The notes under the pieces: generated by a model | The model's database searches: none | What the model was told of the DNA's origin: nothing | The model's input: only the letters and a program-made list of their open reading frames with translations | DNA from: Styela clava | Lineage: Eukaryota | Reading direction: 5' to 3' | Length of the DNA: 64,000 nt | Assembly (NCBI RefSeq): GCF_964204865.1 | Contig: NC_135254.1 | Coordinates: forward strand, 19,468,001 to 19,532,000 | Translations under genes and position numbers: made by a program | In this document: one piece after another, positions 14,326-57,643 of the stretch | How positions within the stretch are numbered: the stretch's first letter is position 1 | Layout: every line of letters begins with the position of its first letter

Positions 14326-17038
14326 ATGAATATCAGAACATTGTTAGTGACTTTGATTGTGTCAGTAATTACGGTATCTGGGGATGAAACAGATACCAAG
14401 AAAGTGTGGTGTGTGGATGATACTGTGATGCAAAACACTGATCTTGTCAAAGGCATTGATAGAGATGATTTGTGCAAATCAAGTATAAGTAAGTGCTTCC
14501 CTTTTTATTGTATTGTTTCTTATGATGGAAGTGCATGTCATCTAAGGTAGCAGTTCCTTTACAGCGATTACAATCAATAGTACATTGTGATAATTTATAA
14601 CTAGTTTAATCCATAAGCAAAATATGTTTTGTAATAATGCTTATTTTTTTCAAAATGTGCTACCAATCACTGATCTCGGCTAAATGAATATAAATTAAGG
14701 ATAAGGCTAACCATGTATGTCATATATACTGTTAGTTTTACTCAACTTTTTTCATATGTTCAGTAAATGCCACACCATGGTCAGATGAGGAGGATAAAAC
14801 ACCAGCTAAACCAGAAAATCTCCAACTTCAAGCCCGCACTTATAAAACTGATGATGAAAACTCATCAAGGCAAATAGCTGTGTTTATATCATGGAGACAG
14901 AAAAGTAAGAAATTCTTTTCAGCCCTACTTTTATTTGTTTTCAAATTTACACTGGTCAGCCATTGTTTTGTCATTGAGTGGATGCTCTTTCAGTAAAGAT
15001 AAGTTCATTGCACTGTGACAAATTATCACTGTTGAGTTCAAAAATATGAATTTCCACAGTGGGTGACCTGCCTTCCTCACAAAGTTACTATGTTGAATTG
15101 AATTTTATCAATCCTCCTGGTCAACACAAGCAATATACAATGACATGGGATAATGCTCTGTTGAGGGAACTGGAGAATAGTACAGCACATTATGTAAGTT
15201 TTTTTAAAATTAAATATCAGGAATTAGTCTAGGGTTTCATATTTACCATGGGGAAAATAAAAGGCAGAGCAAACTGTAACTGATGATCAAAGGAAATTTT
15301 TGTATTTTAAAATTATAGGTGAAAAAATATATTTTTATACAAACAGGTTGAATTCAATTTTATCTACTGCAGCAGAATTGAAGGAAGCTACCATATTGGG
15401 CCCGGTGATAAATACCGGTTCAAGATACAAGGTTTACCCATGTATCAAGAAGACTCAGATCCCCAACTTGTCGCTGGGAATATAGCAATACCAGGTACAA
15501 AAAAATACGAAACTACACTTCCACAAGAAGTCCGTCAAACTTTTGATATTTAATTATTATTTACACTTTCAGGTTGTAGAAAAAGCAAGGAAATTCGAAG
15601 ATCTGCAGCTTGCCGCAGTCATACAAGAAGAAAGAAACGTCCAAAACCTAGTATTATTATTATTGTTTATTACTATTGATGAGAATGAAATCCTTTGAAT
15701 CAAAATAAATAAATGTACCGTACATAAAAAATAGAATAATGGACGATGGAAACTGATGCGTATCTGCAATACAATGCAAATCCATTAATTCTGATGATTT
15801 GTTTACAGTAAAGCCTATCAATGAACCAGCTGAAACTATCGATAAAGAAGAACAACCGTCTACTGAATCTGCAAAGAATATGAATGAAGCACAAAATCGC
15901 TCAGGTATTCAAAGAGTAGTGCTGGAAATAAATTCCTGATAAAGAAATTAATGTTTAATCGAAAAATAATTTACTTGCAGGAGATGATCCAGAAATAGCT
16001 GATTTTACCTCAACAAATATTGTTTTCATTATTGTTGGAGCGGTTATCATCGGCGTATTGATTATGGCATTATTATTCATTTTATGTCGTAAGAGGTTGC
16101 ATGGATGTAAGTTATTTTGTAATACTTCTAAGCCTTTTCATGTTTTGTGCATGACTCGCAAGTCACAATCACAACTTACCATATTTCTTATCTATTATTT
16201 AGATATTCTTCCGAAGAAAAGCGTCGCAAAACGACGTGTTCTAATAATCAGCAGTTTAGAAGAAAAATATTCGCAAGCTATTAACATGCTTTTAAAGATT
16301 TTTGACAAGATTGAAAGCATCAAACTAACATGTAATCTACGACAGAAAATTGACATAGGAGAGCATGGAATTGTAAAATGGGTGACAAAAAATGTTACTG
16401 ATGCTGATATTGTAGTTTTTGTCATAGGCAATAAAAGTGAAGTTGCAAAGGATCACTGTTCTGAAAACTCCCCATTAGAAGTAGAAGAAATTGAGAAACA
16501 TCAAGTTGGGCAATCACTCAATACAGCAGAAACCATCATCAATTCGAATAAGTGCGTAAATTCGCACAAAAAATTTATAGTACTCGACCTACATCATCAT
16601 GTTAAGAGGGAAGATTTGCCGATTTTCAAGCACTATAGATTGCTATCGGATTTCAAAAAATTCACCCATCATGTTATTGGAGCATCACATATCATGAGCA
16701 CTAGTGATAAGAAGATTTTCAGTAATCTACTCTCAAATGCACAGCTGGGATATGGAACAAAAATTACAACCGCGGAAATAGATGAAGATGACGTTATTGA
16801 TCCAAAAAATGCTCCCATTTCTGGCCAAAATAATTTTGATTCTCTACCATTCCCACCTGCAAATATTGAAGAAGGACAATCCCTGGCATTGAATATTGAT
16901 GATACTTCAGCATATGTTGATGGACCTCCATCGTGTGAAAGTAATCAGTCTCACGAGTATGTAACAACTGATTATAACAATCCAGGACAATCTTACAGAT
17001 ACCTCAAGGCAGGCGCTAGACCAAAAACAAAATGCTGA
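14326..17038 (+). CDS. IL-17 receptor-like gene A (signal peptide, single FnIII, stalk, TM, SEFIR, tail)
   Basis: Exons 14326-14488 (signal), 14764-14904 (PWSDEEDKTPAKPENLQLQ...IAVFISWRQK), 15060-15193, 15347-15494 (VEFNF...PGDKYRFKIQGLPMY...IAIP), 15573-15650 (GCRKSKEIRRSAAC), 15809-15904, 15981-16106 (TM IVFIIVGAVIIGVLIMALLFIL), 16203-17038 (RRVLIISS...IGEHGIVKW...ADIVVFV, SEFIR-like). Confidence 0.88.
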
Positions 17039-17656
17039 CATTGATAATAATACAACCAAGTCTATATAAAATGTTGGGCACTAGAATCTGACAAGGGCAT
17101 CCTTATATTTAAATGAGCTAGGAATGGAGTTGGATCTGAACGCTGGCAAAATGTCTCGCATATCATACCATTATGCAATAAACACACTTGAAAGCCATTG
17201 ATTTTTAAAATCATTTATTCAGCTTCCTATGATTTGTTCTTCCTATTGCCTGATACTGAACATTCGGTTACTTTACTTATTACTTGGGTTTATAATAATA
17301 TTTTCATGTGATTCTATGTACACTCTGCCACACGAATAATAGCTGATGCAGTTTTTATTTGTCTTTCTATGTATATTACCCTTATCAAAATAAACACCAT
17401 ATTGTTTTTTATTATTATGCTAAAGTGTGCAGAATATTTTCGTTAATGTCCATAGACAGCATCTTATTTTTGGGACATTTAAAACTACTGCTCACATTAT
17501 AAACTTTTGTGCAATTTTTTCTATGATATAGATCAGCTAAATGAATATCATGCGATGAATAAAGAGATCGAGATCCTAAAACCGCATTGCGAGCGCGGAA
17601 AGTTTTTATTAATAGGTACAAATTTTATTTCTCTGGGAATGACCATTACTATAGAC

Positions 17657-17836
17657 CAGTGGTTCTTAAACTTTAAGCCAGATAGGAAGGAAAAAGTATG
17701 TTTTATTCAAAAAGTACGTGGATGGAACGTAAATTTTGTAATTATCCCAAATAAGGCGGGCAAAATCAAATCTGAGAAATATTTTTATTTTCAATAGCTT
17801 CACACCCCCTAAAGAAATTGTGTATGAGAACCACTG
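17657..17836. mobile_element. hAT-type MITE (related truncated copy at ~23040-23240)
   Basis: TIRs CAGTGGTTCT / AGAACCACTG. Internal segment AAGGCGGGCA(A/G)AATCAAATCT...AAATATTTTTATT...TTCAC(A/G)CCCC is shared with 23140-23200. Confidence 0.75.
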
Positions 17837-18175
17837 CCATATAACATCTGATGTTTTTAATATACGAATTTAACTCTGAAAAAAAAGGTGATTTTTATTC
17901 AAAAGTTTGCAGTTATACTCTGATCAATGTTATTTGCTATTCTTTTCTCCAGAATTGAAGTTATAAAAAATTTCTAACTTCCGTTATTAATGTTTTTTCT
18001 TATTATTGTATTCATATTCAGAAAAACTAGTTTGTGATTGTGATTAACTGAACTATAGTACCTATTGTGAAATGTTTGTTCCTTTTTGAGGTGTTATTTT
18101 GTTGTATTTGTGAGCCAAAAGTTTCAGAAACCTGATAATGATTTTTTTGTGTTTATATAGATTATATAGGATGTA

Positions 18176-21100
18176 ATGATAGCAAGTCTTATAAAATGCA
18201 TCCTGCTTTTACTGATGTTGCTGCTACCTTCTTCATTCTCTATGAATTGCATGTCGGGAAAAGGAAATATATGCACATGCAAACAAAGTATGTTGTTTTT
18301 ACATTTAAGTATGACAATTTGTTCACTGTTTCGAATGTATATATCCAGAGACAACATTTAAGTCCAATCATAAAAGTATTAGCCATGAATATCTTAATGG
18401 ACAGAATTCATTCAGCTGGGCGGCCTCGGAATTGACTTAAAAAACCAAGTTTGTTTTACTCAATATGGTTTGAGAAATGTGATACATGCTTAAAACTCAA
18501 GAATTTGCTGTTCATGTAACTTATTTTAAAGAGGGTGTGTCAAGATAAAAGGGTGATTGTATTGAAATTTTGAAAAAATCAAAAATAGTTTATGACATAA
18601 AAATTTACAGAACTCTTATATATTTAAACCTCGCCAAAATTCATGGTTGATTTGATATTAAAAAAGATGGTCGATAAATGAAGGTGTGTTATAGAAAAAC
18701 GCAGAAATAACAATGATTTATTTACAACAATATTTTGACTGATATTGGTAATTTATTATTACATTTTACAGGACGAGGAATACCGTGGTCAATACCGACA
18801 GATAGAACCGCTCCTGCTGTGAATAATGTCAACGCCCGATTTTTTGTTGAATCCGAGAGGATTGGCATTAAAGTAAAATGGAGCTATCGAGGTGAGGCCG
18901 TGTGTACGCTAATTTGTTTATTAAGGCCAAACAACGAATTCTATTTGATTTTCGTTTATGAAGTCGTAATGTTATTAAATAAAAACCGAGCCTTACTATA
19001 TTTGTAACTTATCTTAGGTATAATAAATTGGAGAACATTCAGGACATAGTAGCTCATTACAAAATTTCAGAAAGCCTCATAAATTATAAAATATTTATAT
19101 CATGGTAGTGGCCAAGATTTCAAATTAGCTCTCTGTCCTGGTTAAATAAAAGCTTGTTAATTTCCATATACAGTTATGTATTTGCCAGACATTTCTGGAG
19201 GATTTTTGATTGAAGTACTATATTCTAAAGGTGACCCAAAATATTATCACTGCAATGTGACAGTTCAAAGAACTAGATCAAAGAAACCCGCTGTAAGTAT
19301 GCTATTAGAATTTGGTTAAGTAATCAATTATTCTACCCAGCTATAGAAATTCGTATAATAAGATTATAATACATTTCAGATTACATTTCAATTCATATAT
19401 GGAACTGGTACTGTACGACCAAAGGATGAATTTCTGTTTAAAATATCATCACTTCCGCTCTATACTTTTGATAGCAAGCCATCTAGCGAATCAGTTACAT
19501 TACTTGTTAAAGGTTAGTATTCAGAAAAACATTAGGAATTGAAATTCTATATCATACTCGGTTCTGATGGCATTGTGAATATTACATAAGATCAAATAAA
19601 GCCTGAACTCATTGTATTTGATTTCCACAAACAATAGTTCTTCCGAGTATTGTGGAAATGACCATGTTTTTGATTCTATTCTGAAATGAACTAATTCAAA
19701 AATTGAGATCAGTTAGATTATGATCAATGACAAGTACAAACTTAAACTAGCATCCCTAGTTTACTCAACACTGTAGGTTCCACATGCTACAGACAATGAT
19801 TTTTTTTCCGCATACGGCCAGAAAACTGCATCTCATTCGGTGTAATACTAACTAACACATTATTACGCATATATATATCTAACAGGTTGCAAACACAAAG
19901 ATATATCACGAACTATATACTGTAAAAGAGACAGAAAAAAAGTTTCTATCAGGATAGATGAGAACCCAGTACATGGTGAGCTGGCATTGAATTGTCTTTC
20001 TTGGTAACACTAATTGTTATTTGATATGGAGGGTATAGGCTCAATGCACTGAGGCCGACTAGAAATGAAATTTTGAAATACCAATAACATATTTATATTC
20101 AATATAGGCTATACTGTATTTCTGTTAGAATTTGAGCATTGACTTTTTTCAGATCAAACAATCTTTGATCAAAGAATCTTTGTTACCCTTTTTGTGTTGT
20201 GTGCGATCCTCATCACTCTACTGATATTTTATTTTCTGGCCATCATATGCATATGCAACAAACCAGGTGGGTTCGGTTAATTGACACTAACTTTAGAGAT
20301 GGCAAGCCTCTTGATTTTGCTGCTTTTTGGTATTGAAAACAAATTTACCAATGACTTTGTAAGTGTCATCTGAAAAGCTATTTGACAAACTACATAGTTT
20401 CTGTGTCATAACTTCTATTTACTCAATATGCCAATATTTGTGTTCTGGTCAAAAATATAATTAAGAAGATTCAATTTAGCTGACAGTAAAATTTGCATTA
20501 TTTTTTTCCAGGATTTCCTACTCTGACTCGTGTTAATCCTAGAACAATATTAATTGTTGGCAATGTTGACAATGAAGGAAAAATATTATTGACTAACGGA
20601 CTTTATAACGTTTTACGTTCAAATGGAGGAAATAATGTATACACCATCTCCAATGTTCAAAATATGAATGCAATTGGACAAGAAGGAATAACTGTTTGGT
20701 TGTCTAAAAAAATGTCGACATCAGATGTTTGTATCTTCCTGACTGACAATGATCTGACAAATGACAATAGTCATGTCAATATCGCAATTGGTTTAGCAAA
20801 GAGCATGATATTAAAAAAACACCATATCAGAGCCACGCGCAAAAAGATCATTCTTGCTCACTGGAACAACACTATCCACCATGACAATATTGAAAATCTA
20901 GTATTTTGCCAACATTACCATCTCATAACAGACATCAAAAAACTATTGAAACATGCTCTCGGAGAGCATTTTTATTGCACGCCTCAAAATTGTGACGATT
21001 CAAAGGAATTATTATGCAGATTATTATCTACTTTACCCCAATCAGAGTCTATAATCAGTAATGTCGCTAATATTAACGACCTCAGTAATACAGATGTCAT

Positions 21101-21176
21101 TGAAATCTGTGAAGAAGAAGAAACAATGAATATACTAAACCTAGATGAATTACCATCTATTGAATGCAACACATGA
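18176..21176 (+). CDS. IL-17 receptor-like gene B
   Basis: Exons 18176-18287 (signal + CMSGKGNICTC), 18772-18891 (PWSIPTDRTAPAV...IGIKVKWSYR), 19174-19292, 19380-19512 (ITFQF...KISSLPLY), 19886-19975 (GCKHKDISRTIYC), 20153-20266 (TM), 20512-21176 (RTILIVG...IGQEGITVWL...SDVCIFL, SEFIR-like). Confidence 0.87.
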
Positions 21177-21639
21177 ATTTCCGTCATCTGGTGTCTAATT
21201 ACTGATCTCTATCTAACCAATCTTGGATATTATATAGTACATAACATAGAAGCATCTGGAGAAAAAAAATTCGTACATTTTTTTTTAAATTAAAGACCTC
21301 AATGAAATGTACATACACAATTATGCAACTTGCCCTATCTAACTAAGCACATTTATTACATTACTAAATTTCCACTGTAATACATGAATTTTTTGTATCA
21401 TATATTTTTCTATTTTGTATTAAAATGAACCTGGTTGTCATTTTTCAATGATTTGTCATCATTGATGTTGACAAGCATTCCCATAATTAATGTTATTTAT
21501 GTAGAATTTAGGTAGGCCCCATCAATGCTATACATTTATTTATACTACAATTTTCAGGTTTTTGTATTTTCAATACATTATCACTTGTGTTGTTATGCTT
21601 AACAAAATATGTGTGTTTATTTTTAGATGGTAGGCTGTA

Positions 21640-24600: not shown

Positions 24601-25748
24601 GTTCAGGAGCACCGTGAAAACTAGTGTCAATGCGTTATTGCTGCAAACAGATAAATATATATCAACCTGATATCGTGGTACTTAAGCTCTGAACAAGGCC
24701 CTATATAAGCAACCACTGATATATCATGACACGTAAGAGGTTACTTTACTTTTCAGTTAAGAAATGTCTACCCAATTTATTACACTCTGGGTAAGATGAA
24801 GAGCAAGAAATTTTAACCAAGATTTGTAAACTGCAATACTAAATTTTTAACCGGTACTACGCTAGTGATTCTCATTTGGATGTTTATGTTCCATCCACTT
24901 ATTTTCAACATGATTTTTGAATAAAACATACTTTCGCCTCATTAGCTTACTAGTTGGTGAGGCGCGAGAACCACTGTGCTAGGCCATCGCTCCACGCGAT
25001 TTGTGTAAAAATGATAATATTCTGGAAATTCCTTACAGGGGAAAGAGAGAAACTACCAAAAGAAGTTCGACATATTTTAGTAATCGGAGATTACATTGAA
25101 AGATACACACCGGTGATCAATCGATTAATTGAAATTTTCAGAGAAGATAACGTTGAAATTCATTCAAATATACGACAAGTTTCAGAAGTGGGACAAAATG
25201 GTATCATAACATGGACGACAGAAGCACTGGAAAAAGTGGATGTTGCAATATTTGTTGTAAACAGCTTGTCACAACTTAGAAACGAAGATGTAACAGTAAT
25301 TGAACAAAACGGAAAAGATCAATACTCTCCTGTTAAAATAGCTATTAGAATCGCAGAAAACATTGCACTGAAAAAAGGTTTCAAAAACTCCAGAAAGAAA
25401 TTCATAGTTGTAGATTTGAACAAATGCATCGTCGAAAATCCCTTAGTAATGTGTGAAGTTTACAACCTGGAAAAAGACTTCAAAAGAATGCTGAAACATG
25501 CACTCGGACCTAATTATAAGGATGAAAATATAAAGCAAAAGAAAGAGACGTTAGCTAAGTTAATTTCCGCAAGTCGAAAACCAAGATCAACCAGACCAAA
25601 AGAAAGATCTCTTCAACCGGTGATTGATTTTGAAAAGTCAAACAATCTTGATGAATCCATTCCACACGAGTGTGAACAAATACCACTGAATTCTTTAAAT
25701 ATACAACAAGATCAGCCACCGTCTGTAGAATGTAACGTATGTAGGTAG
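21640..25748 (+). CDS. IL-17 receptor-like gene C
   Basis: Exons 21640-21709 (MQNYGLALCLFLILLVCWSKVVD, signal), 22445-22573 (GWSKKEVKPAPAV...IGVDITWTQK), 22834-22949, 23530-23674 (VTFRY...PGKTFYIKIFGLPMY), 23941-24012, 24090-24140, 24309-24356, 24424-24519 (TM), 25039-25748 (RHILVIG...VGQNGIITW...VDVAIFV). Confidence 0.85.
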
Positions 25749-26439
25749 CAGTTTATTTGTGTAAAAAAAAACTCGATTTTATCATCATCTTTAGTAAGAT
25801 TGTATGTATACCATAGCTCTGTAGTACACAAACTCTTTTTTTTTCTTCTTTATTTCATACTTACCAAAAGCAAGACAGCGATAAGCGAGTGAATGATTTA
25901 TTAAAATTTTCAGCGAAACTAGCCTTGTATATTTTTCCACTTTAAACGTGATTTTATTTGAGCAATTAAATTCTTCACTTTGATTAATTTTTTTCATTGA
26001 TGCAATTGTATAATCTTCATATTGTTTTTTTCTTTCTATGTATTATTATACTGTGTCTTATCAGTACCTTCACTATGTCATTTTCATTTTCTAACATGTG
26101 TCTGATTTATCAATCACCAAGCTCACTGTCATCAACTGTGTCTGCATATCCGTACAACTTATTTGTTACTAATGAATATTTTGGATTTTAATACAACTAA
26201 CCAACGAGTACATTTCTTTGATATTATAATTTTTCAAAAATTTTTACTAATTTCTGCAAAAACAAAGCACATCTCTGGTTCATATCTCGCCCATTATTGA
26301 ATATTTATAAAGGACCTTTTTCAGATTGAAATTCGTTGATAAGAATTTTATAAAAAAGAGCAACTCAATCAGCGACGATTGTCTCCCGGGGAAGTCAAAA
26401 CATTTATAAGCCAATTTTTATAATTGTTTTTTCAAATTT

Positions 26440-26965
26440 CTATCGATTTGTTGGATGGCTATTTTTATTTATGCATGGTCATTTTATTTATTCTGGTCTG
26501 TTTGAAACTGTATAATATGAGACTTGAGATATCTAGAATTAAGATTTTGACTTACAGTGGCAAAACAAAACAAATTTGCTGGATGACTTTTCATTTATTC
26601 ATGCATGATCATTTCATTCCTATCCGTTGTGTGTAATGAAATTACTCACGTAAAATGTTTGATACTTTATTGATGGGACTGTAGAAATAGATCTCTAGAA
26701 AGGAGAATATGACTGCTGACAGTGGTAAAACTAATTTGTTGGATTACTTTTCATTTATTTATGCATGATCATTTCATTCTTCTCCGTTGGTGTGTAATAA
26801 AATTACTTATGAAAAATTTTTGATTCATCTTTAGTTGAGATATCTAGAATGGAGAATATGACTGCTGACAGAGGTAAAACTAATTTGTTGGATTACTTTT
26901 ATTTATGCATGATCATTTTATTCTTTATCATCTGTTCATGTGTAATAAAATTACTTACGAAAAAA
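26440..26965. repeat. ~160-bp imperfect tandem repeat (3-4 units) between genes C and D
   Basis: Recurring TCTAGAA...GACT...AAAAC.AATTTG.TGGAT.ACTTTT...ATGCATGATCATTT...GTGTAAT.AAATTACT. Confidence 0.8.
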
Positions 26966-32000: not shown

Positions 32001-33412
32001 GTGTTATATCTGCACTGATGACTGTGTTTACCATAATCGCAGCTATAGCATTGTACTACGTCATCTGCAGAGCCATAGGTAAGAATATAAAGCTAATTAG
32101 ATTATAAGAATAGATATAAAATCTATTCTTCTTCAAACTAAATTTTTAGCAGTAAATTTCCTGAAATATTTATCGCACTTTCAATTTTGTTTCAAAACAA
32201 GAAAATATGAATATTTACTAAAAAAAAAAGACAAAAATGTTTCCTATCAAAACATAATGTTAACATTGCAGAGAAAGAACACAAAAGAAGAAAGAAAGAA
32301 ATGTCAAATAGAGGGCGAATAAAGAAGCAAGGTCAGTGGCTAATGTTAGAATCATAACATGTATCGGGCTTGTTCGAAGCAAAAGGGGTGAAAAAAGAGT
32401 AATATAAAAAATGCATAATATAAACTAATATCCAGGCTTCAATATCACTATCAATTTGTAAGACAATACTTTACTTTCTATTGCGACAGAATCAAAAATA
32501 AAGTCCAAGGTGATGATTATCGCCAACATGATGGATGCTGAAGAACAAGTAAAGGATGAAATATACAAAAAAGCTGCATTGTGTCTTGCAAATATATTAT
32601 ACGAAAGTGGAGAATTCGAAGTTGGTTGCAATCTATGGGTAATGAAAGACATTGCACAAATGGGAATAGCAATGTGGACACACAATATAATCACATCTCA
32701 AGACAAAATAGTCTTGGTGTGCAATCCCCACACAGTTGCTGCATTGAAGAAATATTGCCCTAATGAAGGTGTCAGCCAGAATAAAAGTCTCGTTCACAAC
32801 CCCAATTCCTCCGCTCAGATCATTTATAGGATACTAATGAGCACCCACACTCTTGAGAAAAAACTAGTCATTGTTTGTCTAAATGATGAGGAGCATGACT
32901 GCTTAGCAAACCTGATGCTACCTACTTTGAATCATTGCGAAAGATATGACCTCGTTCATCAATTTGCAGGTTTAATACAAGCATTATATAAGAATCCCAA
33001 TGATGCAAAGCGTATGAAAGCAGAAATAATGGCAACTATGCAGAAAAGTTTATCCCACATATTCCTTGCAAATAAAAATCAAGACGAAATTGATAAAAAG
33101 GTTGGAAATGACTTTGATAGATTGAAATCTTCAATACAAGAGCAAATGTGGCTGATGAATGAGAACAAACCGGCACAGAAACTACCAGATAAAAAATTCC
33201 CTCATAAAAACAACAATCCTGCGGCAACAACAGAAAAAATCATTCCTGATATGCAATTTGATTCAATGTTTTCTTCACGATGCAACAGTCACAGCACAGA
33301 AACTATTTCAAGCTGTGGGGATACGGGATTCCAGGAGACCAATCACATGCATTACCAATCACATTACCATCCCGCTGGAGCCAGACCCAGGACTTATTCA
33401 AATAAACTCTAG
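29006..33412 (+). CDS. IL-17 receptor-like gene D (most canonical SEFIR of the array)
   Basis: Exons 29006-29135 (signal), 29656-29775 (TAPTPECM...KITWMQK), 30052-30186 (DLQYVDGYYMSIL), 30643-30760 (VTFSF...ISSMPMY), 31152-31211, 31414-31554 (acidic stalk), 31971-32078 (TM), 32272-32331, 32490-33412 (KVMII...AALCLANIL...EVGCNLW...IAQMGIAMW...DKIVLVCNP; compare the IL17RA SEFIR pattern KVWIIYS...EVALDL...ISEAGVMTW...KIIVLCS). Confidence 0.88.
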
Positions 33413-33951: not shown

Positions 33952-34194
33952 CAACATAATAATAAAAGTAAACATCAATTTAGATTGTAAAATCAAAAAT
34001 CATTTTTTAATAGTATGAATCCTTAGTAATTTATTTCCTAAAGAAGCTACCGCAGATTATATATTTACTATACTACACACAATTTTGGTATATTATTTGA
34101 GGGAAGTAAAACTGAAGTATCTTAAGTCACATTTATCAGAAATGAACTTGTTTGATCTGTCGTTATGTACTTGTTACTTATCAATTTTAAGTAT

Positions 34195-34445
34195 GTGGAT
34201 AGGTATTTGTCTGTCTGTGTGTCTGTCTGTTAGATGCACGCGATAACTCACGAAAGCGAGATTGGATCTGCTGCAGTTGCATGTGCATTCATCATATCTC
34301 GTATCAGGAGCCTATTGATTTTGGGCGAATTATGTCGTATAATTAGCGAGTTATCAATTAATTAGTGATGGGACACAAGGTGTCAATATGGAGTAAAAGC
34401 GCTGTTTTGGGGGATCCCCTAACTTTTGATGGAAGAGTCTTCCCT
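34195..34445. mobile_element. Interspersed repeat with (GTCT)n, possibly Helentron/HINE-like; second copy at 3-52
   Basis: GATAGGTATTTGTCTGTC...AGAT(A/G)CACGCGATA(T/A)CTCACGAAAGCGAG occurs at both places. Family assignment is inferred from the GTCT microsatellite layout. Confidence 0.5.
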
Positions 34446-38100: not shown

Positions 38101-40609
38101 CTATAGATAATTAGAAAGAATGCGGTATCACTTTGTTTATTGCAAAAAAAAGAGAGCATTTCAATGATTATCAACAATTACAAAAGTGAACCTAAATCTG
38201 ATACCTGGGTAATAAGTAAGATAGAGACAACCTAATATTCAAAGACAGTAATTAAAAATAACATGGCTATTGGCAATACTATTCTGCAACCAGCTTTCTT
38301 CACAGATTCAAACAATAAATTTTATTCCTTAACAGGTGGGAAGACATATTTGAGTACCACAACAACTACAACAACCGAAGACCCTACAGAGCAACAAAGT
38401 ACACCTTCATATACTGGTAATGATCACAGTATTAGCAATTTATAATTTTCACAATAAGTGAAAAGAGACAGTCACTGGAGTTCTTTAACTAAATGTGTTT
38501 GATTATTGAGATCCAAAAACAAAAACTTTCTCAGCCATTACACTAATTCTTGCAAACCTTATTAATCAAATTTCCCCCATTCACCTTTTTTGTTAAACTA
38601 GTCTGTAAGTCAGTTTGAGCTTAAAAAACCGAAATTTATTTCAATGTTCAATGCAAGTGGTAGGCACATTCGATTTCAGACACACGGCTAATTCTTTTAC
38701 CATGGACTGAGTTGCTCTTTTCACACTTTTAGTAAGTTCTAAGACATTTAGAGAGTAGCTATTGACAAGTGCAGTTTATAAAACAACAAATGAAGACAGC
38801 ATGTAATATATTGAAAAACACGTTTATCCTTTTTGCTGTCCTTACACACTGTGTTACACAGACCCTTAATAATTATTTTACAAACTCATAATTATGATAT
38901 TAATCATTTCAGAAACAATATATTTTATTTAACAAATATTAGAATAGGATTTCATATTTATTAGGGGGAGAGAAAAAACGCAGCCTCCTGTCCACGTTGG
39001 ATTTAAGACTAGTTAACAGGGTATATGTTTCAGATGCATGGACTTAGAGGTGGTGGAAGCCATAACCATATGCCATCCCATGATACCAAGAAGTCCAGCA
39101 GATCCTGCGAACACAATTATTCCCCAGATTTGATTATCCCTAAGATTCGAATCTGCGCGCACCTAATCAGAGGAGGAATGGCAGAGGAGGGATAGCTAAA
39201 GATTAGCACAATAAGCCAAACGCCAAGTCTTAAATGTACTATACTTGAATACATATTAATATACTCTTCAATCTCTTCAGAAAATTGGATAACATTCTTC
39301 ATTGTCATTTTGGGGATATGTTTGGTCATTGTGGCTGCTGTGGTAATATATGTGAAGAAAAAGAAAAAGCAAGGTATTATGCCTATTCACTTAATATGCC
39401 AGTAAAGCAGTTGTGATATTTTATTTTTTTCATGTGACACTCACTCATGCCTTTTACTCCAAACAAACCCCTGTACAAGAAGTCACTCATATCTAACAAT
39501 AGGTAAGGAGCTTACATATATGAAAAAGCAAATCTTTTCAGTTAGGCTTTACACTCTGGGTGAGGTGGGGCCATGCGATTTGAACGTGACACGTTATGTA
39601 AACTGTAAAGCCAACACGTTTAAGCCTAACACTTCATCTGCTGCTCATAAATAGGGATAGGGAGTAGCAGCAGATACATGCAATTACAGAAACTTTTATA
39701 CAAATTGTCATTAAATGACCCTAAATGTTATTAAATGCTAATGTAAATACCCACAAAAAAGGTAAAATTACTTTTCTGGTCTCCCCAGAAAAATATTACT
39801 AGCTGCTACCATTTAGTATATACAGATAATATTTTGTTATAGGCCAAAACTTTGAGAAAGAGGAAAATACTGACTTCAAAATAAGAAATATTCTGATGGT
39901 AGCTGATAAAAAAAAGAATTGTGATGAAGTGCATGGAATAGCAACAAAAATGAGGGAATATTTCCCAGAAGTACAAGTGATCTGTAACTGGGAAAATCGT
40001 AATGAAAAATCAATTAGCAACTGGTATTCAAAAAGAATGGAGGAAGCAAATGTTGTAATATTTGTTGAAGGAGTGGAAATTTTGAAAATGCTGGAAATAA
40101 ACAATAAGGAAATACAACAACAAACTGATTTTACAATGGCAATCAATCATTTTTTATTTCAAAGTAGAAAAAACATTTTTAAACCAGCAATGTTTTTAGT
40201 TAGAAATGAAAGGGACAGTTTTTACATTTTGACTATGCATAAAGCAAAAAACTGTCATGCCTTTCTCATAAAGAATTCAACAGATGAATGGTTTTATAGG
40301 TACTTGGAATCCATTGCAGTCGCTACGCCTGCAAAAAATAGTAAAATCAAAAAACAACATCCAAAAAATCAAGCTCAACAAAAACAAAAAATAAGTCTAG
40401 AAGAGCAAGAAAAATTCATTGAGCAAGACAATGAACACTACAAAGCAAATAGAGCCAAGTCAAACGTTGTTCATATAGAAATGGAAACAATAGCTGAAGT
40501 ACATGCTCTTGATAAAGATGAAAATGGTAATACACAGATTGGTGAACGTGACCCAAACAACTGCGTACAAAAAGGAGCAAGACCAAAAGAAAGAACAACT
40601 GGCCTATAG
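35117..40609 (+). CDS. IL-17 receptor-like gene E
   Basis: Exons 35117-35339 (signal + 8-Cys cap), 36033-36158 (PTLNMSWDQE), 36959-37071, 37782-37950 (IRFRYDCF...VASLPM...FTIP), 38336-38416 (Thr-rich), 39280-39374 (TM), 39843-40609 (RNILMVAD...ICNWEN...ANVVIFV). Confidence 0.85.
35375..35587. repeat. ~107-bp near-perfect tandem duplication in gene E intron 1
   Basis: TAAGATAATTTT...CCATATGTATCAAAAGGG occurs twice in tandem. Confidence 0.9.
37243..37560 (-). mobile_element. tRNA-derived SINE
   Basis: On the - strand it starts TGGCGCATCATGCTAAGTG (A-box-like), then GGGTTCGCAAGTTCAAATTC (B-box-like), and ends in a (CTTAT)n tail. Body shared with other copies in the window. Confidence 0.7.
38942..39230 (-). 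mobile_element. SINE, same family, decayed
   Basis: ATAGGATTTCATATTTA end, GATGCATGGACTT...GGTGGAAGCCATAACC core, GATTCGAATC B-box-like. Confidence 0.6.
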
Positions 40610-44700: not shown

Positions 44701-47700
44701 CTAGGTTAGTAATAGAGCTTTGTGTGAGATTTTTTTTCTTATTTGTTTACAGACTTTATTATTCATTGTCAGGCTCAAAATATATATTGCCTCTTATTGT
44801 ATTAAGTAAATCATTTCAAAGTTAATTTTCTTACAGAAATATGTTAATTTTGGCTATCAATGCATTGGTATGAGATACTGGTTCATAAGACCTGGAGATT
44901 ATATAGAAGTAAAGCTTCATTCACTACCCATGTATCACACAACAACAAATATGCAAGCACTGAAGAGAAATATCACAATTCCAAGTAAGAGGGGAACATA
45001 GGTTATCAAATAAATAAATTTTTTACAGAATCAATCTTAAAGTATTACTGATAATCCCCTAGAATAAAGCTTTTGCATTGCAACATAGTTGAAAGTTCGA
45101 TGAACGCATAATCCTCCATTTTGTTCATTCATTCATGCAAGGTTAAGTACTCATTTTATTTGTATTTGAAAATAGCAAATAATTTGTTGAAATTTATTAC
45201 AGAATGTATAGAAGATGAAAGACTCGTTAGTGTTAAAAACAAGGAAATTTCAGACAAAGCTTGCAAAGATTTCTGGCGAAGTTTGTGAATTAACTATTTT
45301 ATTACACATGACATGAGAGTAATGCTCTCATATATGGACATGAAGAGTGTTTATCGGTACCGGTACAGTGAGAGTGTTCTCTTTAATCAGAATAAAAATT
45401 TTGGTGATATATTGGGTCCCATAGGACCTGGCGGAAATAAAAAAAAAAACTACCTAATAATCTTCTTTAAAATTCTTCCATCCGACTGAAAATTTGATAT
45501 CGATTGGACCATTGGAAAAAAGTCATTTATTTCAAACAAAAATTCAGAAAAACTATCCATATACTATCCATACATTCTTAGACATGTCCCTACTACATAA
45601 TTCCAAATGCCAACTGATATTAGATTATTGATTTTCAGGTATATGGAACATAAGAAGATCAACAACACCAATGCATTCTACCTTTAGTGTAAATGGTAAT
45701 GAAGCATATTGCAATAGAATATTAATTACAATTAATTACAATTATTAACTTTTTTATTCATAAATGATCATTATATATTAATAATGTTACATTACTGACA
45801 TATCACATTTAGAATATTTCAGATCATTCTACATAGGTGACACCCCAGCCCCCCCCCCCCCCAAAAAAAAATAGATTACTGTAACTTTTGTGTAAAATCC
45901 GACACAAAATTTAAGTGTTACAAAATTTTCTTCATTTTCTCATAGAAGTAATTTAGAACTAAGGTCACCCTGTATGTAGATATCACTATGTTGAATGGAT
46001 TTCATATTTCGGTTGTATGTTTTGATGAAAGTTAGATTATTTAGACATCTATAATTTGTTTTTGTTTTTCATTCACAGCTTCCACCCATAAGCCGGTCAT
46101 TGTACACATGAGAAAACCAGGTAAATTTTCATTGTTTACTGAATTTGTTCTATCAAAAGGGATCACTTTAATATTGTGTTAAAAGATAGCAACAAACTGA
46201 GGCACATTAAACCTGATTTTGGTACTGTAATAAGAAAGTAAGAATCCTTATTATTTCCATGTTAATAGCAGGAACCAATAACTTGCAACTTTATAGCGAT
46301 TTACAATTACTATAGAATTTTAGAGATGACTAAATGATAAGAAGGTATAGTATCCGGAGTTAAAACCCTTGTTAGTGCAGCAATCAATCCAAAGTCTCCA
46401 CTCTCAACCCTATTTCTGGTGTGTGTGGGTAAGCTCAAAATAAATGGCTAATATTTGAGAATTATATAAAAATGTTCTCTGAGATTTCAACATTCATTTA
46501 TTATATAACATCGACTTATTAAAGACAGCAATATATATAGGATGTTTTATGTGAAACATATGGGTACATATGTACAAATAAATAAATCATTCATTTCAGT
46601 TAATATTTTATGTTTCGATCTATATTTCTGTTTACAGATCAAACAATTTACTTCGTGTTAGCATCTGTCATTGGAGCATTTCTCTTCCTGATAATTCTTG
46701 CAAGGATGGTTATACAAGAAAAGAGAAATAAAAATAGAAAACATTCAGGTGGGTTAAGCAAACTGATATTATTCTTAACAAGAGAGCGATAGTGATGATT
46801 AAGAAAGTCAAACCCCAAGAAGCGTTCCCATTGAATTAAGATAAAGAAAGAACAGCAACATTTTTGGTGACATATCAAGTCACATCAGACTGACTTCCGG
46901 AGGCTTCTTCCATCTTTCAGTACTAAAATTTGAAACTGATTGGTCCAGTAGTTGTGATGAAAAGCGATTTTAGCACAACAACAACCCCAAACATCCCAAC
47001 AAGACTAACAACAACAATATTTGATTGTAAACCAATTACGCCCTCTTCCTGTCTGATAATGTTCAATGAACCTTTAACTGTCTATCATATATGATAGAAG
47101 ACAAATATATTATGAACAATGTTGTAACATTGATGTTTCTTGCTAATGGACCATTGATTGAACTGTGGGTGTTCACGAACAAGAATCTCACAGGAGAATA
47201 TTAAATGAAGAGAAAAATTGCTGGATTTATCAAAGTCACATGATGCTCTTAATTGTTAAACTAATTAGTCATTCTCATAAAAAAACTAGTACTGGTACCC
47301 TGGCATAAGGCTGGAGTGAATCATATCATTGATTATTTCATACCCTTTCCCATCCGTTAAAATGTAAAAATGAAAAATTATCCCCTGAGCTTAACATTAA
47401 AATACAAATAGTATTAAAGAAGTAAATATAATAGAATATTACAGTAAATGTTTGCATTACATCCCTACTTATTATTCTACTTTGTTTTCTAATGCTAAAA
47501 GTTCACCTTCCATTACTATTTGGACTAATTTACAAGAATTCAAAGTGGACCAACAGAAATATTCTTATTTCATGTTATTTGCCCAAAATTTTGAGAATGT
47601 CTCATTAATACCACAGTCTCCTTACCAATAAATCTCAAAAATTGTTAATACAGGTGAAAGAAGAATTCTTGTTATAGCAGATAACAGCGACAACAGTAGA

Positions 47701-48180
47701 TTGGATGAAATACATTCAATGATTGCGCGACTGAGGCATGAGTTCAATTTACAAATAGCAAGTAACTGGGAAAACAGAGTAATAATTGGTAAAGATTGGA
47801 TGGATTGGTATCAACAAGCCATGAGCAATTCCAATACTATTCTGTTTATAGTAAGCTATAAAATTTTTTGCGATAGTCTTACTTTGACTAAAACATTGCA
47901 TTCCGGGCAAGAAATCAAACAGGCATTCAATCAAGCACATTCTTGCAAGATACAAGGAAGAGCAGAAGTTATCATTCTTCTTACTGGTAAAGTGAACAGA
48001 ATTCGGATGTTGTTAGCGAGACAAAAAACACATTATGTAGTATACAGCATGCAGAACCACTACAAAGATTTTTTGCTGCATATGACGGGCAAAACAGCAT
48101 CAAAAGACAAAATAAAATATTTGATGAGTGCTATTAAAAACTGTGATCAAAGGAATGAAGAAGCAGACACATTAGTATAA
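41790..48180 (+). CDS. IL-17 receptor-like gene F (short cytoplasmic tail)
   Basis: Exons 41790-41943 (signal), 42337-42461 (PWPKDEDKTA...IALDITWSQK), 44334-44451 (NIEGYYL), 44837-44984 (VNFGYQC...PGDYIEVKLHSLPMY...ITIP), 45203-45280, 45639-45695, 46079-46120, 46638-46748 (TM), 47654-48180 (RRILVIAD...IASNWEN...SNTILFIVS). Confidence 0.85.
43392..44077. mobile_element. pogo/Tigger-like non-autonomous element in gene F intron 2
   Basis: Imperfect TIRs CCATATATTCTCATATATAAGCCGA / TCAGATTATATGCAAGAATATACGG followed by TA; subterminal TATAAGCCGA repeats. Confidence 0.65.
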
Positions 48181-49990
48181 ATATGAGAGCATATTCAATA
48201 TGTAAAAATGTTGAAATCAGCTCATCAAAATCACAAGTTAAGAGGATCAAAAAAGTCAACCAATAATATAGTGAAATATGGAGTAAGATCAAAAAATTTA
48301 AATGGTCCTTCTGTCTATTCACACACCATGCAGCTAGTTTTTACGAGCAAATACCAAACGAGAATGACTAGAAAAGCATGTCTGTCAGTTTTATATTGTC
48401 TATATTTTTCTTTCTTTGTTTACACATTCATATCCTTATAGGACTTTCATTTTTGTGGAATGCGAATGTGATTTTTCCAGTCTCATTAATGTAAGATACA
48501 CAATTGCACTGCCAAGCTTATTATTGACTCAATTTTTATTTATTAATGCAAATGACGTGAACACCATTTTTTATAATTTGTTTCATATCTTTGCATCTTA
48601 CAAACCACCAAGTATTTTTGTATATGAAGAAAGCTACAAAAATTTGAAAAAATTCATTCAATTCGGATCAGCCCCAACTTATTACACTCTGGGTTGATGG
48701 GTATTGGAGGACTTCTTAAGAAAGCAAGGACTAAACCTGAAATCTTTCTTGATGTAAACATAAATAAAATGGAAATTAGAAATGATATATCTTCATTGTC
48801 AATTGATTTGCTTAATATTATGAAGCATTATCTGTAATATGAAACTGCATTAAATATAAATCTAGACATGTCAGCATTGTTGTATAGTGTTTTTTTAAAA
48901 TGGGGAAAAAAGATCCTTGCTGATATTGAATACTACACTGAAAATGGAAAAAAATTTTACTTTTCGATTTAATCCAGACACTAGATTTTATACACCACTA
49001 ACGAATTATAACCCAATTGTCGCCACTCAACAATGAAGGTTTATATGGCCAGGAAGCACTTTTAAGGTGGAACGATTAGTCCAGAACATAACAATCTACC
49101 ATATGCAATAATATCAGTCCAACTGATATATAGTTAGTGTAATTTTCCCCTAATGAGATTCAAATGTCATACACATAAAGGTATACGTTGAATAATATTA
49201 TAAGGTGTTAAAGAATGCAGGAGTGGATGAAGAAATTCTTCAGGCAATGTCCAACAAAAATGTGTCTCCATTCTGCGCATATGAAGAACAATAACAGCAT
49301 TGATACTTAACCTCTGATAGTGGGGTAGCCGAACAAGTAAGTATAAGTGAAAATCATCAATGCAAATACTGTAACACTCCTAGTTGTTAAATTCATTGTA
49401 AAATATAACTTTCAAATTGTAAATTCTTTAATCGATCAAGCAGTATTACTTAATTGAAATATTATAAATACAATTACAAATGAAGGGAAAATTAATCTAT
49501 TGTTTCGTGAAAAATCAAGTCATATTGAAAAAATCAGTTTCTAAAGACAAAAATAGTGTGAAAATGATGTAACAGAATGATAGATATGATTAACCAGGAT
49601 GTTTATATGAACACTGGCAAGTGTTAGGATAAGCAAGTTTCCGAAACCATCATAAATAATATGATGACCTATTTTGAAGTAGTGTCAATGATGATACCTT
49701 CTCAGATTACACCACCGAATCGAAAAATGTAATAAGTTTGTTTATTGTATGCATAAAATTAATGTGAAATAAATCTGTAACCTGTTTCTACTGGTTACAA
49801 ATACAGCAGTCATGGGGTTGTTATGAAAACGGATTTTGAAGTAGTGAAACCATACAGCAATACACACATAAACAAAGAGAATGTATATTTGAAATTTCGG
49901 TCGAGAGGAACATCACACATATATATACAGCATGCACAATAGGATCGTTATCGTTCTTTAGTGGAGCAGTCATTCAGACGACGCAAGAAA

Positions 49991-55900: not shown

Positions 55901-57643
55901 ATGATATAAATATGTTCCACACCACCAAGTGAGTTTGCTTTTTCCAGTATTCACTGGAATTTCTTCACAAAATGTTCAGGGCTTGATGCCAGACTTTGAG
56001 CAAACTTAGTATAGAATAGGATTTACATATTTGTCCTGGGAGAGAGAATAACCGATAAAACACCTTAATCATATGGTGAAACGCAGCCTCTCGTCCGGTT
56101 ACCAGTCCATGTCGGGTATGAGAATAGTTAGCCAGTTATTTGTTTCGAATATGTGGACTTAATGGTGGAGAAAACGTAAACCACCCTCCGTAAACTTGCA
56201 TTTAAAATATCAAAAACATTTTAGGATTAAGGTTCGAACATATTTATATTGTAGGGATATCGATGCAGTGATGCAACCAATGGGATCTAACAACTTTACA
56301 GGTACAGACATTAACAAAAGCTATCAAGTTGTCACATTGGTATTGACCTTGAGTGCACTAGCAATTTTCTTGATGTTTATATTGTGGATTGCAGTGAAGA
56401 GATGCAATTCAAAAACAGGTAATCACCACTAAAGGATCAGATATATCAACAAATATATCTTCAGATTGTTCATACCAGGGTACTCCCGTAGTGTGCGTGT
56501 ACCAGGTTAGAGTTAGGCCATAATTAGATTCCGATTTTGGCCCATGGGTTTCAGTTCCTTTACACAACTTGATGTAAAGTTGGCGAACAAAATTAGTTAC
56601 CTCCATATTGGTACACACGCTACTGGAGTGCCCATACCAGTGTGGTAATGTCTTGTCTGTCTATTTACACAGTGACAATTGTCACAGAACCAGACAATGA
56701 CATGAAGAATAAAGTGTTTCCATGTTTATTGAATAAGTGATTATATGAAATAAAAGCTGGAAAAGTATGGAACTTGAACTAAAAATTTCCCAGTTTGACA
56801 TGGTTTACTCGATTTTTATACCTTGATATGTTGGGCAATCCAAGTATCAGAAAAACAATTCGCCAAATAACTTCTGATAATGATAATAATTTCTGACTAA
56901 CTACTAACTACAAATTAGTACTTTAATAAGAATAATCACAATGTTTCATATGTCTAATACTTTTTACGTTTTTCTACTTTGTTTAAGTACAAACAAATCA
57001 GAAGGAAGTTCTTTTTCTTGAAAAGACAAACAACATGAATTCACTGCACTCACTGGCATCACAGTGGCTTGTCTCAGAAATCAAATCACAAGGTCATGTC
57101 AAAGTAACATACAGCAAATGGGAAATGCTACAACTTGTAGAAAGTCCTATGCTATGGATGAATGATAAAATAGGAAAAGCTGATATCATTGTTCTTCTTT
57201 TTGCTTCAACTGACACTCAGACATTGCCTAAATCGTTCAGAGTCTTGAATGATAAACCAAGTTCAAGCAAAAATATGGATAATTGGCTAGAAAAAAAATT
57301 CTATGAAATATCCGCTGCAAAACATCAAAAAAGAAAGTTCTATCAGGCATCGTTTTCTGACAACAACAACATCTCTTACCAGACTGCAACAATGAAAACA
57401 TATTATTTGATGGAAGATTTAAAAGAGTTCTATACTGCTATCTGTGGAGGTCAAGAATATTCCTTAATCCTGGACAAGACCCATAAATTGTACAAGTTGA
57501 GTGAAACTATAAAAAAATCTCAAAATCATGTCATTCACAATGAAGATAGCGGGATACCCAACTTTACAGATCTAAAAAATGAAAGTAGCCTGATACAAAA
57601 TAATGGAAGTGGAGCAAGAAGAAAAACAATTACAATCAAATGA
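49991..57643 (+). CDS. IL-17 receptor-like gene G
   Basis: Exons 49991-50148 (signal), 51756-51889 (PPKP...IGLRIKWSNT), 52751-52872 (NYIKGYSL...RICFK), 53935-54088 (IEFLY...PGKTYFLELAPNPM...ITIP), 54445-54492 (GCDNERIRKYQGC), 54856-54942, 55277-55330, 56255-56418 (TM), 56988-57643 (KEVLFL...PMLWMNDKIGKADIIVLLF). Confidence 0.86.
53473..53760 (-). mobile_element. tRNA-derived SINE, same family
   Basis: On the - strand TGACGCATCGTGCTAAGCG...GGGTTCGCAAGTTGGAATCC, (CCTAT)n tail, shared GGTTACCAGTC core. Confidence 0.7.
56012..56190 (-). mobile_element. SINE 3' fragment, same family
   Basis: ATAGAATAGGATTTACATATTT...CCTCTCGTCCGGTTACCAGTCC...TAGTTAGCCAGTTATTTGTTT, shared with the 37243 copy. Confidence 0.65.

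What the first reader, a model, noticed from the sequence alone, without database searches (positions are those of the whole stretch)
16990..57643. Conserved C-terminal GARP[KR] motif in otherwise unalignable tails
Seen: A ends KAGARPKTKC*, D HPAGARPRTYSNKL*, E QKGARPKERTTGL*, G GSGARRKTITIK*. The motif always lies within ~11 residues of the C-terminus while the rest of the tails share nothing. Inference: a short linear docking motif under selection. I do not know it from vertebrate IL17Rs; I recall GARPK in endosomal SARA/endofin proteins (unverified), which would hint at a trafficking or ubiquitin-related partner.
Basis: partly seen in the sequence, partly recalled or inferred. Interest (0 to 1): 0.75.

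Follow-up and report, generated by a model that had tools for sequence, protein, structure and literature searches.

The report
Conserved GARPK tail motif, sea-squirt IL-17 receptors
Four of seven tandem IL-17-receptor-like genes of the sea squirt Styela clava end in the same five residues (G-A-R-P/R-K/R), which distant relatives also keep while the rest of the tail has diverged, so it is probably a small, undescribed docking site whose partner is unknown.

Summary
GAR[PR][KR] occurs four times in the six-frame translation of the window (0.03 expected). All four lie 3-6 codons before the stops of SEFIR-exon genes A, D, E and G.

The window is Styela clava. Gene A is NCBI LOC120344275.

Seven further homologues from unnamed Logan/ENA assemblies, at most 44% identical to any S. 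clava paralog, carry the same motif 2-5 residues from their ends. Across the 11 holders G and A are invariant. R and K are each kept in 10 of 11, P in 9 of 11, and Y or F sits at -4 in 8 of 11. The 40 residues upstream are 7.8% identical between clades, against 84% for the motif.

Holders fall in four deep clades. Codons differ at synonymous sites. Spliced contigs from two studies carry gene A's motif.

Best reading: an ancestral, selectively kept C-terminal short linear motif of ascidian IL-17R-like receptors, lost in B, C, F, H and two other paralogs.

The partner is unknown. The SARA/endofin hint found no support. "Tails share nothing" is overstated, because a second Ser/Cys-rich island is shared.

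The scan's only other GARPK note lies on this same window (gene F).

The parts
17012..17026 (+). Gene A motif GARPK (GGC GCT AGA CCA AAA), then TKC and stop at 17036-17038
   Evidence: It is identical in the NCBI model P0001. Spliced contigs of runs X1 and X5 run through it.
17000..17035 (+). Gene A extended motif YLKAGARPKTKC, with Y at -4 from G
33377..33391 (+). Gene D motif GARPR (GGA GCC AGA CCC AGG), then TYSNKL and stop at 33410-33412
   Evidence: NCBI model P0004
40574..40588 (+). Gene E motif GARPK (GGA GCA AGA CCA AAA), then ERTTGL and stop at 40607-40609
   Evidence: NCBI model P0007
57611..57625 (+). Gene G motif variant GARRK (GGA GCA AGA AGA AAA), then TITIK and stop at 57641-57643
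   Evidence: NCBI model P0008
16203..17038 (+). Gene A last exon: SEFIR domain plus polar tail. The exon start is set by a GT..AG joint 16106>16203 in RNA-like contigs.
   Evidence: joint in X1, X5, X8; absent in the colinear X10; Pfam SEFIR 28.5 bits
32462..33412 (+). Gene D terminal open frame (SEFIR plus tail). The true exon start was not mapped by RNA here.
   Evidence: (SEFIR 39.3 bits)
39830..40609 (+). Gene E terminal open frame. Pfam does not call its SEFIR-like domain, but the family profile finds it.
56987..57643 (+). Gene G terminal open frame (SEFIR plus tail)
   Evidence: (SEFIR 23.9 bits)
20508..21176 (+). Gene B last exon, no motif. It ends ..LPSIECNT* directly after the second tail island (21150-21173).
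   Evidence: (joint 20262>20508)
24954..25748 (+). Gene C terminal open frame, no terminal motif. It ends ..PPSVECNVCR* (island at 25716-25745). An internal STRPKER (25587-25607) lies before the island, so it is not in the motif's position.
47632..48180 (+). Gene F terminal open frame, no motif, ends ..EADTLV*. The family profile aligns on through three stops to 48297, where the frame reads ..LRGSKKS.. (48241-48258), a weak possible relic.
16925..16957 (+). Gene A second tail island PPSCESNQSHE. Its counterpart in D is FSSRCNSHSTE at 33269-33301.

Best explanation
GARP[KR], more fully [YF]-x-x-x-G-A-R-P-[KR]-x(2-6)-COOH, is a real, ancestral and selectively maintained short linear motif. It sits at the very end of the polar cytoplasmic tail of the ascidian IL-17-receptor-like family (one IL17R FnIII-D1 ectodomain, a transmembrane helix, a SEFIR domain, then the tail).

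Shown here:
- It is a protein-level feature.
- It is transcribed in gene A.
- It is the best-conserved stretch of the cytoplasmic region apart from one SEFIR tryptophan.
- Only some paralogs hold it: A, D, E and G do; B, C, F, H and two genes on another contig do not.

Inferred:
- The peptide docks onto a cytosolic partner. The two basic side chains two residues apart, the small G-A pair and the upstream aromatic would make the contacts.
- Only motif-bearing chains of what are presumably heteromeric receptors would then couple to that partner, whether for signalling, stability or sorting.
- The protein ends a few residues later because nothing beyond the motif is constrained.

The partner is unknown.
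For: - Statistics: 4 seen against 0.03 expected; 0 of 2000 tail shuffles match.
- Relatives: 11 of 107 family members end this way (the 106 hits plus P0002). Seven of these come from unnamed Logan/ENA assemblies and are 25-44% identical to their nearest S. clava paralog. GA[RK]P[KR] occurs nowhere else in those 107 proteins.
- Per-residue conservation in the 11 holders: G 11/11, A 11/11, R 10/11, P 9/11, K 10/11, Y/F at -4 in 8/11. The invariant columns of the 354-column alignment are W69, G282 and A283.
- Contrast with flanks: between-clade identity is 84% in the motif and 7.8% in the 40 residues upstream (44 pairs).
- Phylogeny: holders lie in four clades with SH-aLRT 100, 97, 96 and 89 and end branches of 0.1-2.2 changes per site. 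The motif columns were not used to build the tree.
- Protein level, not DNA level: synonymous differences at three of the five codons (GGC/GGA, GCT/GCC/GCA, CCA/CCC).
- Expression: contigs from X1 and X5 (two studies) skip the GT..AG intron 16106>16203 and run through the motif and stop to 17547. X8 (a third study) shows the same joint, but its contig ends at 16769. No differing letter is listed in the motif.
- Gene models: the NCBI models of A, D, E and G end with the motif.
Against: - No binding, localisation or signalling data exist, and no known motif class fits.
- The species of the seven outside homologues are unknown, so the taxonomic depth rests on sequence divergence alone.
- The three named Phallusia mammillata relatives lack the motif. 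At least 6 changes of state are needed on the tree, so it is dispensable for many family members.
- G (GARRK), P0025 (GARMK) and P0055 (GAKPK) show that positions 3 and 4 tolerate change.
- The tree is a quick search with long branches, so clade placements are approximate.
Confidence: 0.6

Rival explanations
1. C-terminal sorting or scaffolding signal rather than a signalling adaptor site. The motif would work like the other C-terminal endings of this family (for example -[ST]-x-V), controlling ER export, surface delivery, polarity or recycling.
For: The motif always sits 2-6 residues from the free end. Family members without it often have other loaded C-termini. 27 of 107 end in V, against 6.8% V overall. 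13 of 107 fit [ST]-x-[VIL]-COOH, including E itself (TGL). Gene F in the window ends TLV. The two types of ending alternate within the clades that hold D, E/F and A.
Against: No known sorting signal fits. The endings are not KKxx or KxKxx. RxR fits only D. The last residue is K, N or T in three holders, so a PDZ-type reading of the motif itself fails (consensus patterns recalled, not from a call). Nearness to the end can simply mean that nothing beyond the motif is constrained.
Confidence: 0.2
2. Recognition site of a basophilic protein kinase, or a phospho-regulated site: R at -3 and K/R at -1 of a following Thr.
For: Thr directly follows the motif in A (RPKT), D (RPRT), G (RRKT) and P0025 (RMKT). 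E has KERTT and P0039 has KCT.
Against: 5 of 11 holders have no Ser or Thr after the motif (P0002, P0006, P0009, P0014, P0055). The invariant residues are G and A, not the acceptor.
Confidence: 0.08
3. The motif folds back on the receptor's own SEFIR domain, or on a partner chain's, as an intramolecular clamp that regulates SEFIR-SEFIR assembly.
For: Only indirect: it co-occurs with SEFIR in every case and was found in no other long open frame in the partial genome scan.
Against: Nothing direct. The linker length between SEFIR and the motif varies widely, from about 40 to 130 residues.
Confidence: 0.07
4. Leftover of common ancestry or chance, with no present function; or a nucleotide-level element (a repeat or an RNA site) that merely translates as GARPK.
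For: The genes are tandem paralogs. A repeated exon elsewhere in the genome carries almost the same 15 bases.
Against: The flanks are at random-level identity while the motif is 84% identical across clades whose SEFIR domains have themselves diverged by more than one change per site. Synonymous sites differ. Similarity to the repeated exon does not extend beyond about 25 bases (E above 0.1). Chance expectation is 0.03.
Confidence: 0.05

Closest known systems
Vertebrate IL-17 receptors (IL-17RB SEFIR, PDB 9ot1_B and 3vbc_A)
   Same: Same domain family. The profile of the cytoplasmic regions matches IL-17RB SEFIR at E 1.5e-15 and 2.1e-10. Pfam SEFIR is above its cut-off in A, D and G. P0001 carries PF16556 (IL17R fnIII D1) and PF08357. 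Signalling through SEFIR-SEFIR contact with the adaptor CIKS/Act1 is the established mechanism (passages of PMC11087794).
   Different: None of the three hits named as vertebrate IL-17RB or IL-17RD (P0021-P0023) has the motif. Another first-reader note on this window says the ascidian genes lack the second FnIII domain (s1-822918); I did not test that.
Function-bearing tail elements of IL-17RA beyond SEFIR (SEFEX, C/EBP-beta activation domain) and TRAF-binding motifs such as P-x-E-x-x-(aromatic/acidic); recalled from general knowledge, not from a call
   Same: The idea is the same: short elements C-terminal to SEFIR that recruit or regulate downstream factors, present on some receptor chains only.
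   Different: There is no sequence resemblance. P-K-[EQ] follows the R in 5 of 11 holders, but the TRAF6 and TRAF2 consensus positions after it are not met (compared by eye with recalled consensus patterns).
Class I PDZ-binding C-termini ([ST]-x-hydrophobic-COOH); consensus recalled
   Same: Position at the extreme C-terminus of a type I receptor. Family members without GARPK often end this way (13 of 107; 27 of 107 end in V).
   Different: The conserved residues of GARPK are 2-6 residues away from the carboxylate. Among the 11 holders only E (TGL) fits the class I pattern.

Membership tests
IL-17 receptor family (genes A-G) | Cytoplasmic SEFIR domain | tested here: met
   Pfam PF08357 scores: A 28.5, D 39.3 and G 23.9 bits (cut-off 23); C 22.0, F 17.5 and B 15.6 bits below it; E is not called. 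All seven match the family profile at E 1.9e-93 to 2.5e-41 in the genome search. The profile matches IL-17RB SEFIR in the PDB at 1.5e-15.
IL-17 receptor family (genes A-G) | Extracellular IL-17R fibronectin-III domain and a single transmembrane helix | tested here: met
   PF16556 is precomputed on P0001 (gene A). A hydrophobic stretch IVFIIVGAVIIGVLIMALLFIL lies before SEFIR. For B-G I read only the NCBI models and ran no domain scan of their ectodomains.
IL-17 receptor family (genes A-G) | Binds an IL-17 ligand and signals through CIKS/Act1 | not testable with these tools
   SEFIR-only open frames that could be CIKS-like exist at C5:17.29 Mb, but no interaction can be tested here.
Short linear motif (SLiM) | 3-10 residues, conserved while the flanks diverge | tested here: met
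   84% against 7.8% identity between clades. G and A are invariant in the 11 holders.
Short linear motif (SLiM) | Lies in an intrinsically disordered region | not tested
   Pfam called no further significant domain on the terminal open frames, tails included (only weak hits below cut-off), and the tails are polar by eye.
Short linear motif (SLiM) | Binds a defined partner domain | not testable with these tools
   No partner is known. The PDB sequence search with the last 30 residues of A found nothing at E up to 10.
   None of the 15 listed of 18 'GARPK' papers concerns them. GARPK has 0 occurrences in the 10 listed endofin/ZFYVE papers. No such motif appears in the passages shown from PMC8567383. 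The protein sequences themselves were not inspected.
Class I PDZ ligand | [ST]-x-[VIL] at the carboxyl end | tested here: not met
   Of the 11 holders only E (TGL) fits.
Basophilic kinase site | Ser or Thr at a fixed distance after R/K | tested here: not met
   Thr directly after the motif in 4 of 11. No Ser or Thr after it in 5 of 11.

The most novel reading that the evidence does not exclude
GARPK is the docking site of a so far unrecognised, ascidian-specific branch of IL-17 receptor signalling. Only the motif-bearing chains (A, D, E, G types) would recruit a lineage-specific adaptor or regulator that acts beside or instead of CIKS/Act1. The repeated loss of the motif (B, C, F, H types) and its replacement by -ECN or -x-V endings would create decoy or differently wired chains. 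The tandem array would then encode a combinatorial receptor code.
Probability: 0.2. Interest if true: 0.7.

Novelty: new variant of a known kind. Interest (0 to 1): 0.5.

Why it matters
IL-17 receptors are studied mostly in vertebrates, where little is known about what the tails beyond SEFIR do outside IL-17RA. Ascidians are the closest invertebrate relatives of vertebrates, and here they show an expanded, fast-evolving receptor array.

In that array one five-residue tail element is kept better than almost the whole SEFIR domain. This gives a concrete, cheap handle for finding a new partner of the pathway: a 9-12 residue peptide. It also sorts the paralogs into functional classes.

If no partner exists, the finding remains a clean example of a lineage-specific linear motif detected from raw sequence.

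Tried and rejected
The three cluster look-ups gave no names for the Logan/ENA proteins.

2. Widening the set by word search with the 11-row alignment returned only 3 proteins already known.

4. Search for another gene family sharing the C-terminal motif.
- The extended pattern ([YF]xxxGARP[KR]) gave 46 matches (control 21). Among the 30 loci cut out, only A and D have long upstream frames; the others have at most 83 codons.
- Motif plus TRR at 2, 3, 4 and 5 codons gave 6, 23, 9 and 23 matches, fewer than the reversed-pattern controls. Among the 38 loci of the first three scans, only A has a long upstream frame and a stop within 6 codons (351 codons). The one other long frame, L074 (129 codons), is a TGG match described in the next bullet.
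- L074 is a frame next to a UBX-domain exon. Its motif lies 10 residues from the end.
- The 5-codon scan gave no loci, so its rows were read only as printed.
- The scan is therefore incomplete, and short terminal exons would be missed.

5. GARPKTTG[K]* at C4 and C19 first looked like a second family with the C-terminal motif. I rejected this. It is a roughly 135-base repeated exon with an AG in front and GT directly after TTG. Many copies read on past it, so the motif there is internal. Its similarity to the window stops at the motif.

6. C's STRPKER was rejected as a positional counterpart because it lies before the ECN island.

7. H's NGSRQNSYTI against G's SGARRKTITI is not significant (E 3.4).

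8. Known motif classes compared by eye (TRAF6, TRAF2, di-lysine, RxR, 14-3-3 mode III, SH3 RxxK, WDR5 Win, AT-hook) do not fit. These patterns are recalled, not taken from a call.

9. Papers.
- Listings only were seen.
- Passages were seen for PMC11087794 and PMC8567383.
- No paper found describes this motif.
- Supplements are closed. The SI figures of PMC11087794 on IL-17R and CIKS architectures might show tunicate tails, and I could not see them.

Whole proteins used are the NCBI models as the tools returned them.


Full report
What is there. The window has no N and is 32.4% G+C. It carries seven + strand open frames that end genes A to G, at 17038, 21176, 25748, 33412, 40609, 48180 and 57643. 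Pfam finds SEFIR in A, D and G above its cut-off and in B, C and F below it. It does not call E. A profile of the seven plus one homologue matches all seven in the genome at E 1.9e-93 to 2.5e-41. It also matches the solved SEFIR domain of IL-17RB at 1.5e-15.

The word search identifies gene A as NCBI 'uncharacterized protein LOC120344275 [Styela clava]' (P0001, 573 aa, PF16556 plus PF08357). The 90% identity arises only because my query read through a 96-base intron. The window is G000:C5:19468001-19532000.

The full-length proteins I used are the NCBI models as the tools returned them.

The observation. GAR[PR][KR] occurs exactly four times in the six-frame translation, all on the + strand. 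The sites are 17012-17026 (A), 33377-33391 (D), 40574-40588 (E) and 57611-57625 (G). The stop follows 3, 6, 6 and 5 codons later. Relaxed patterns find nothing more on the + strand.

The expected number is 0.03. In 0 of 2000 shuffles of the seven tails was a 5-mer shared by 4 of 7. The codons differ at synonymous positions (GGC/GGA; GCT/GCC/GCA; CCA/CCC), so the constraint is on the protein.

Relatives. A HMMER search of 1.84 billion representatives with the family profile gave 106 proteins at E up to 0.001. Together with P0002 that makes 107 proteins, of which 11 end with G-A-[RK]-[PRM]-[KR] followed by 2-6 residues.
- Four are the NCBI models of A, D, E and G.
- Seven come from Logan or ENA assemblies without names: P0002 and P0006 (..GARPKQINC), P0009 (..GARPKEPC), P0014 (..GARPKYM), P0039 (..GARPKCTNGT), P0025 (..GARMKTKSLN) and P0055 (..GAKPKERNL).

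These seven are 25-44% identical to the nearest S. clava paralog. The S. clava genome holds only ten loci of the family, none of them these. They therefore come from other organisms. Two outside relatives, P0055 (a holder) and P0019 (G-like, no terminal motif), each show a longest contig of 24,203 bases, possibly the same one. If so, the tandem arrangement is shared.

GA[RK]P[KR] occurs nowhere else in the 107 proteins.

In the 11 holders G and A are invariant. R is kept in 10, P in 9 and K in 10. Y or F stands four residues before the G in 8. In their 354-column alignment the only invariant columns are one SEFIR tryptophan and the motif's G and A. Between clades, the 40 residues upstream of the motif are 7.8% identical and the motif 84% (44 pairs).

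Phylogeny. A quick IQ-TREE of 36 cytoplasmic regions was rooted on three vertebrate and one annelid protein. It places the holders in four clades:
- the D type (SH-aLRT 100);
- the G type (97);
- the E/F type (96);
- the A/B/C type (89).
End branches of the holders run from 0.1 to 2.2 changes per site. The motif columns were not among the columns used. At least 6 changes of state are needed.

The simplest history is presence in the ancestor of the ascidian family, followed by repeated loss. The three named Phallusia mammillata relatives lack the motif.

Within S. clava, four of ten loci hold the motif.
- B and C end right after another island (..PSIECNT, ..PPSVECNVCR).
- F ends ..TLV, with a weak possible relic behind its stop (..LRGSKKS..).
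- H lies just beyond the window's end (LOC120344278) and ends ..EEKV.
- The two genes on contig C1 end ..KPKII and ..CREC.

Expression. Contigs of three runs from three studies (X1, X5, X8) skip a GT..AG intron at 16106>16203. Those of X1 and X5 continue through the motif and stop to 17547. The colinear contig of X10 has no joint, as expected for DNA. The runs are only guessed to be RNA; the spliced form is the evidence. No differing letter is listed inside the motif, while X5 shows four differences elsewhere in A's tail, two of them amino-acid changing. Ten rows of that table were not shown. Gene B is spliced as well, with six joints.

The tails are not wholly unrelated. The alignment lines up an island S-[IVC]-[ED]-[CSN]-N with Ser-rich flanks: A PPSCESNQSHE, B PSIECNT, C PPSVECNVCR, D FSSRCNSHSTE. 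The same island appears in P0009, P0014, P0018, P0020 and a Phallusia protein. An LN[IL] element sits in front of it.

How it most likely works. Shown: a nine-residue element at the free end of a polar tail is kept by selection in a subset of chains. Inferred: it is a docking peptide. G-A allows a close approach or a turn. R and K, two residues apart, give two basic contacts. P fixes the backbone. The aromatic at -4 adds a hydrophobic anchor.

By analogy with vertebrate IL-17 receptors, chains pair and SEFIR recruits CIKS/Act1 (passages of PMC11087794). On that model the motif would give only some chains access to a further partner. I put selection on the motif at about 0.85 and 'docking site for a cytosolic partner' at about 0.6. 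Whether the partner serves signalling or sorting is open. The family's other endings (27 of 107 end in V, 11 of 107 in C) show that the extreme C-terminus is often functionally loaded, which keeps the sorting reading alive.

What is known. No known motif class I could recall fits (see Tried and rejected). 'GARPK' in the paper library gave 18 papers, none on a receptor motif by title or abstract. Searches for ascidian or Styela IL-17 receptors gave no paper on these genes' tails. The SARA/endofin recollection found no support.

The genes are members of the IL-17R family. The motif is a new feature of them, hence 'new variant of a known kind'. The scan's only other GARPK note lies on this same window (gene F).

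Limits.
- The species of the outside homologues are unknown.
- The tree is a quick search.
- The genome-wide scan is partial.
- Supplements could not be read.

Noticed in passing
window 16925-16957 (A), 21150-21173 (B), 25716-25745 (C), 33269-33301 (D): A second conserved tail island, S-[IVC]-[ED]-[CSN]-N with Ser-rich flanks, preceded by LN[IL]. B, C and the outside homologue P0015 end directly after it. The D-type version (FDS.[FY]SSRCNSHSTE) recurs in P0014, P0018 and P0020, and loosely in a Phallusia protein. It is probably another linear motif, perhaps a phosphorylation cluster.
   Followed up: partly
window 48160-48177 (F ends TLV); L049:1471-2043 (H ends EKV); 107 family proteins: 27 of 107 family proteins end in Val (6.8% Val overall) and 13 fit [ST]-x-[VIL]-COOH. 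The terminal Val or PDZ-like ending alternates with GARPK within clades.
   Followed up: partly
window 17033-17035; P0002, P0006, P0009: All four A-type proteins end in Cys (..KTKC..QINC..QINC..EPC). 11 of 107 family proteins end in Cys. A lipidated terminal Cys is conceivable but was not tested.
   Followed up: no
G000:C4:25.03-25.30 Mb and C19:15.9-18.4 Mb (L077-L080, L088-L100): A repeated exon of about 135 bases reads ..LHLG.PT.SNPE...AFPLIPPEPSNRRD.NV.SGARPKTT. It has an AG in front and GT directly behind. It gives 26 matches confined to two clusters, with copies 0.75-4.5 kb apart. No Pfam domain was found nearby. It is an unknown modular gene or genes, and the GARPK there is internal.
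   Followed up: partly
many contigs, e.g. G000:C8:3609821, C9:11581645, C13:21369404: A dispersed repeat with a G+C-rich palindromic core (GGGGCGCGCCCC) reads FSNGGARPK in one frame. Another repeat (TACTAAATCATCGGGGCTAGCCCCAAA) has an in-frame stop. Together they account for most genome-wide pattern matches.
   Followed up: no
G000:C14:3078710-3081736 (L074, - strand): A 329-codon frame with a UBX domain (E 1.2e-07) is followed 126 bases later by a frame ending ..SSNNASGARPKVPKWFKLGKK*. The motif lies 10 residues from that end. Whether the two frames belong to one gene was not tested.
   Followed up: partly
window 47632-48180: The NCBI model of gene F (P0010, 390 aa) leaves the SEFIR frame after ..EIKQAF and ends ..SYHSSYW, whereas the window's frame runs on to ..EADTLV*. 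So F has either two 3' forms or a doubtful model.
   Followed up: no
window 19289-19380: One intron of gene B is GC..AG, and three letters (TCT) lie between the two sides of the joint in three runs.
   Followed up: no
window 34192-34382 (- strand) and 13-49: The first 191 bases of the L077 query piece (bases 1101-1291 of that C19 locus) match the D-E intergenic region at 88% identity (E 3e-66). This is a repeat shared between contigs.
   Followed up: no
window 26689-26964 and 35375-35587: Two intergenic tandem repeats: 149 bases x 1.9 copies and 107 bases x 2.0 copies (98% matches).
   Followed up: no
P0055 and P0019 (Logan): An E-like and a G-like homologue each list a longest contig of 24,203 bases, possibly the same contig of an unnamed assembly. 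If so, the tandem array predates the split from S. clava.
   Followed up: no
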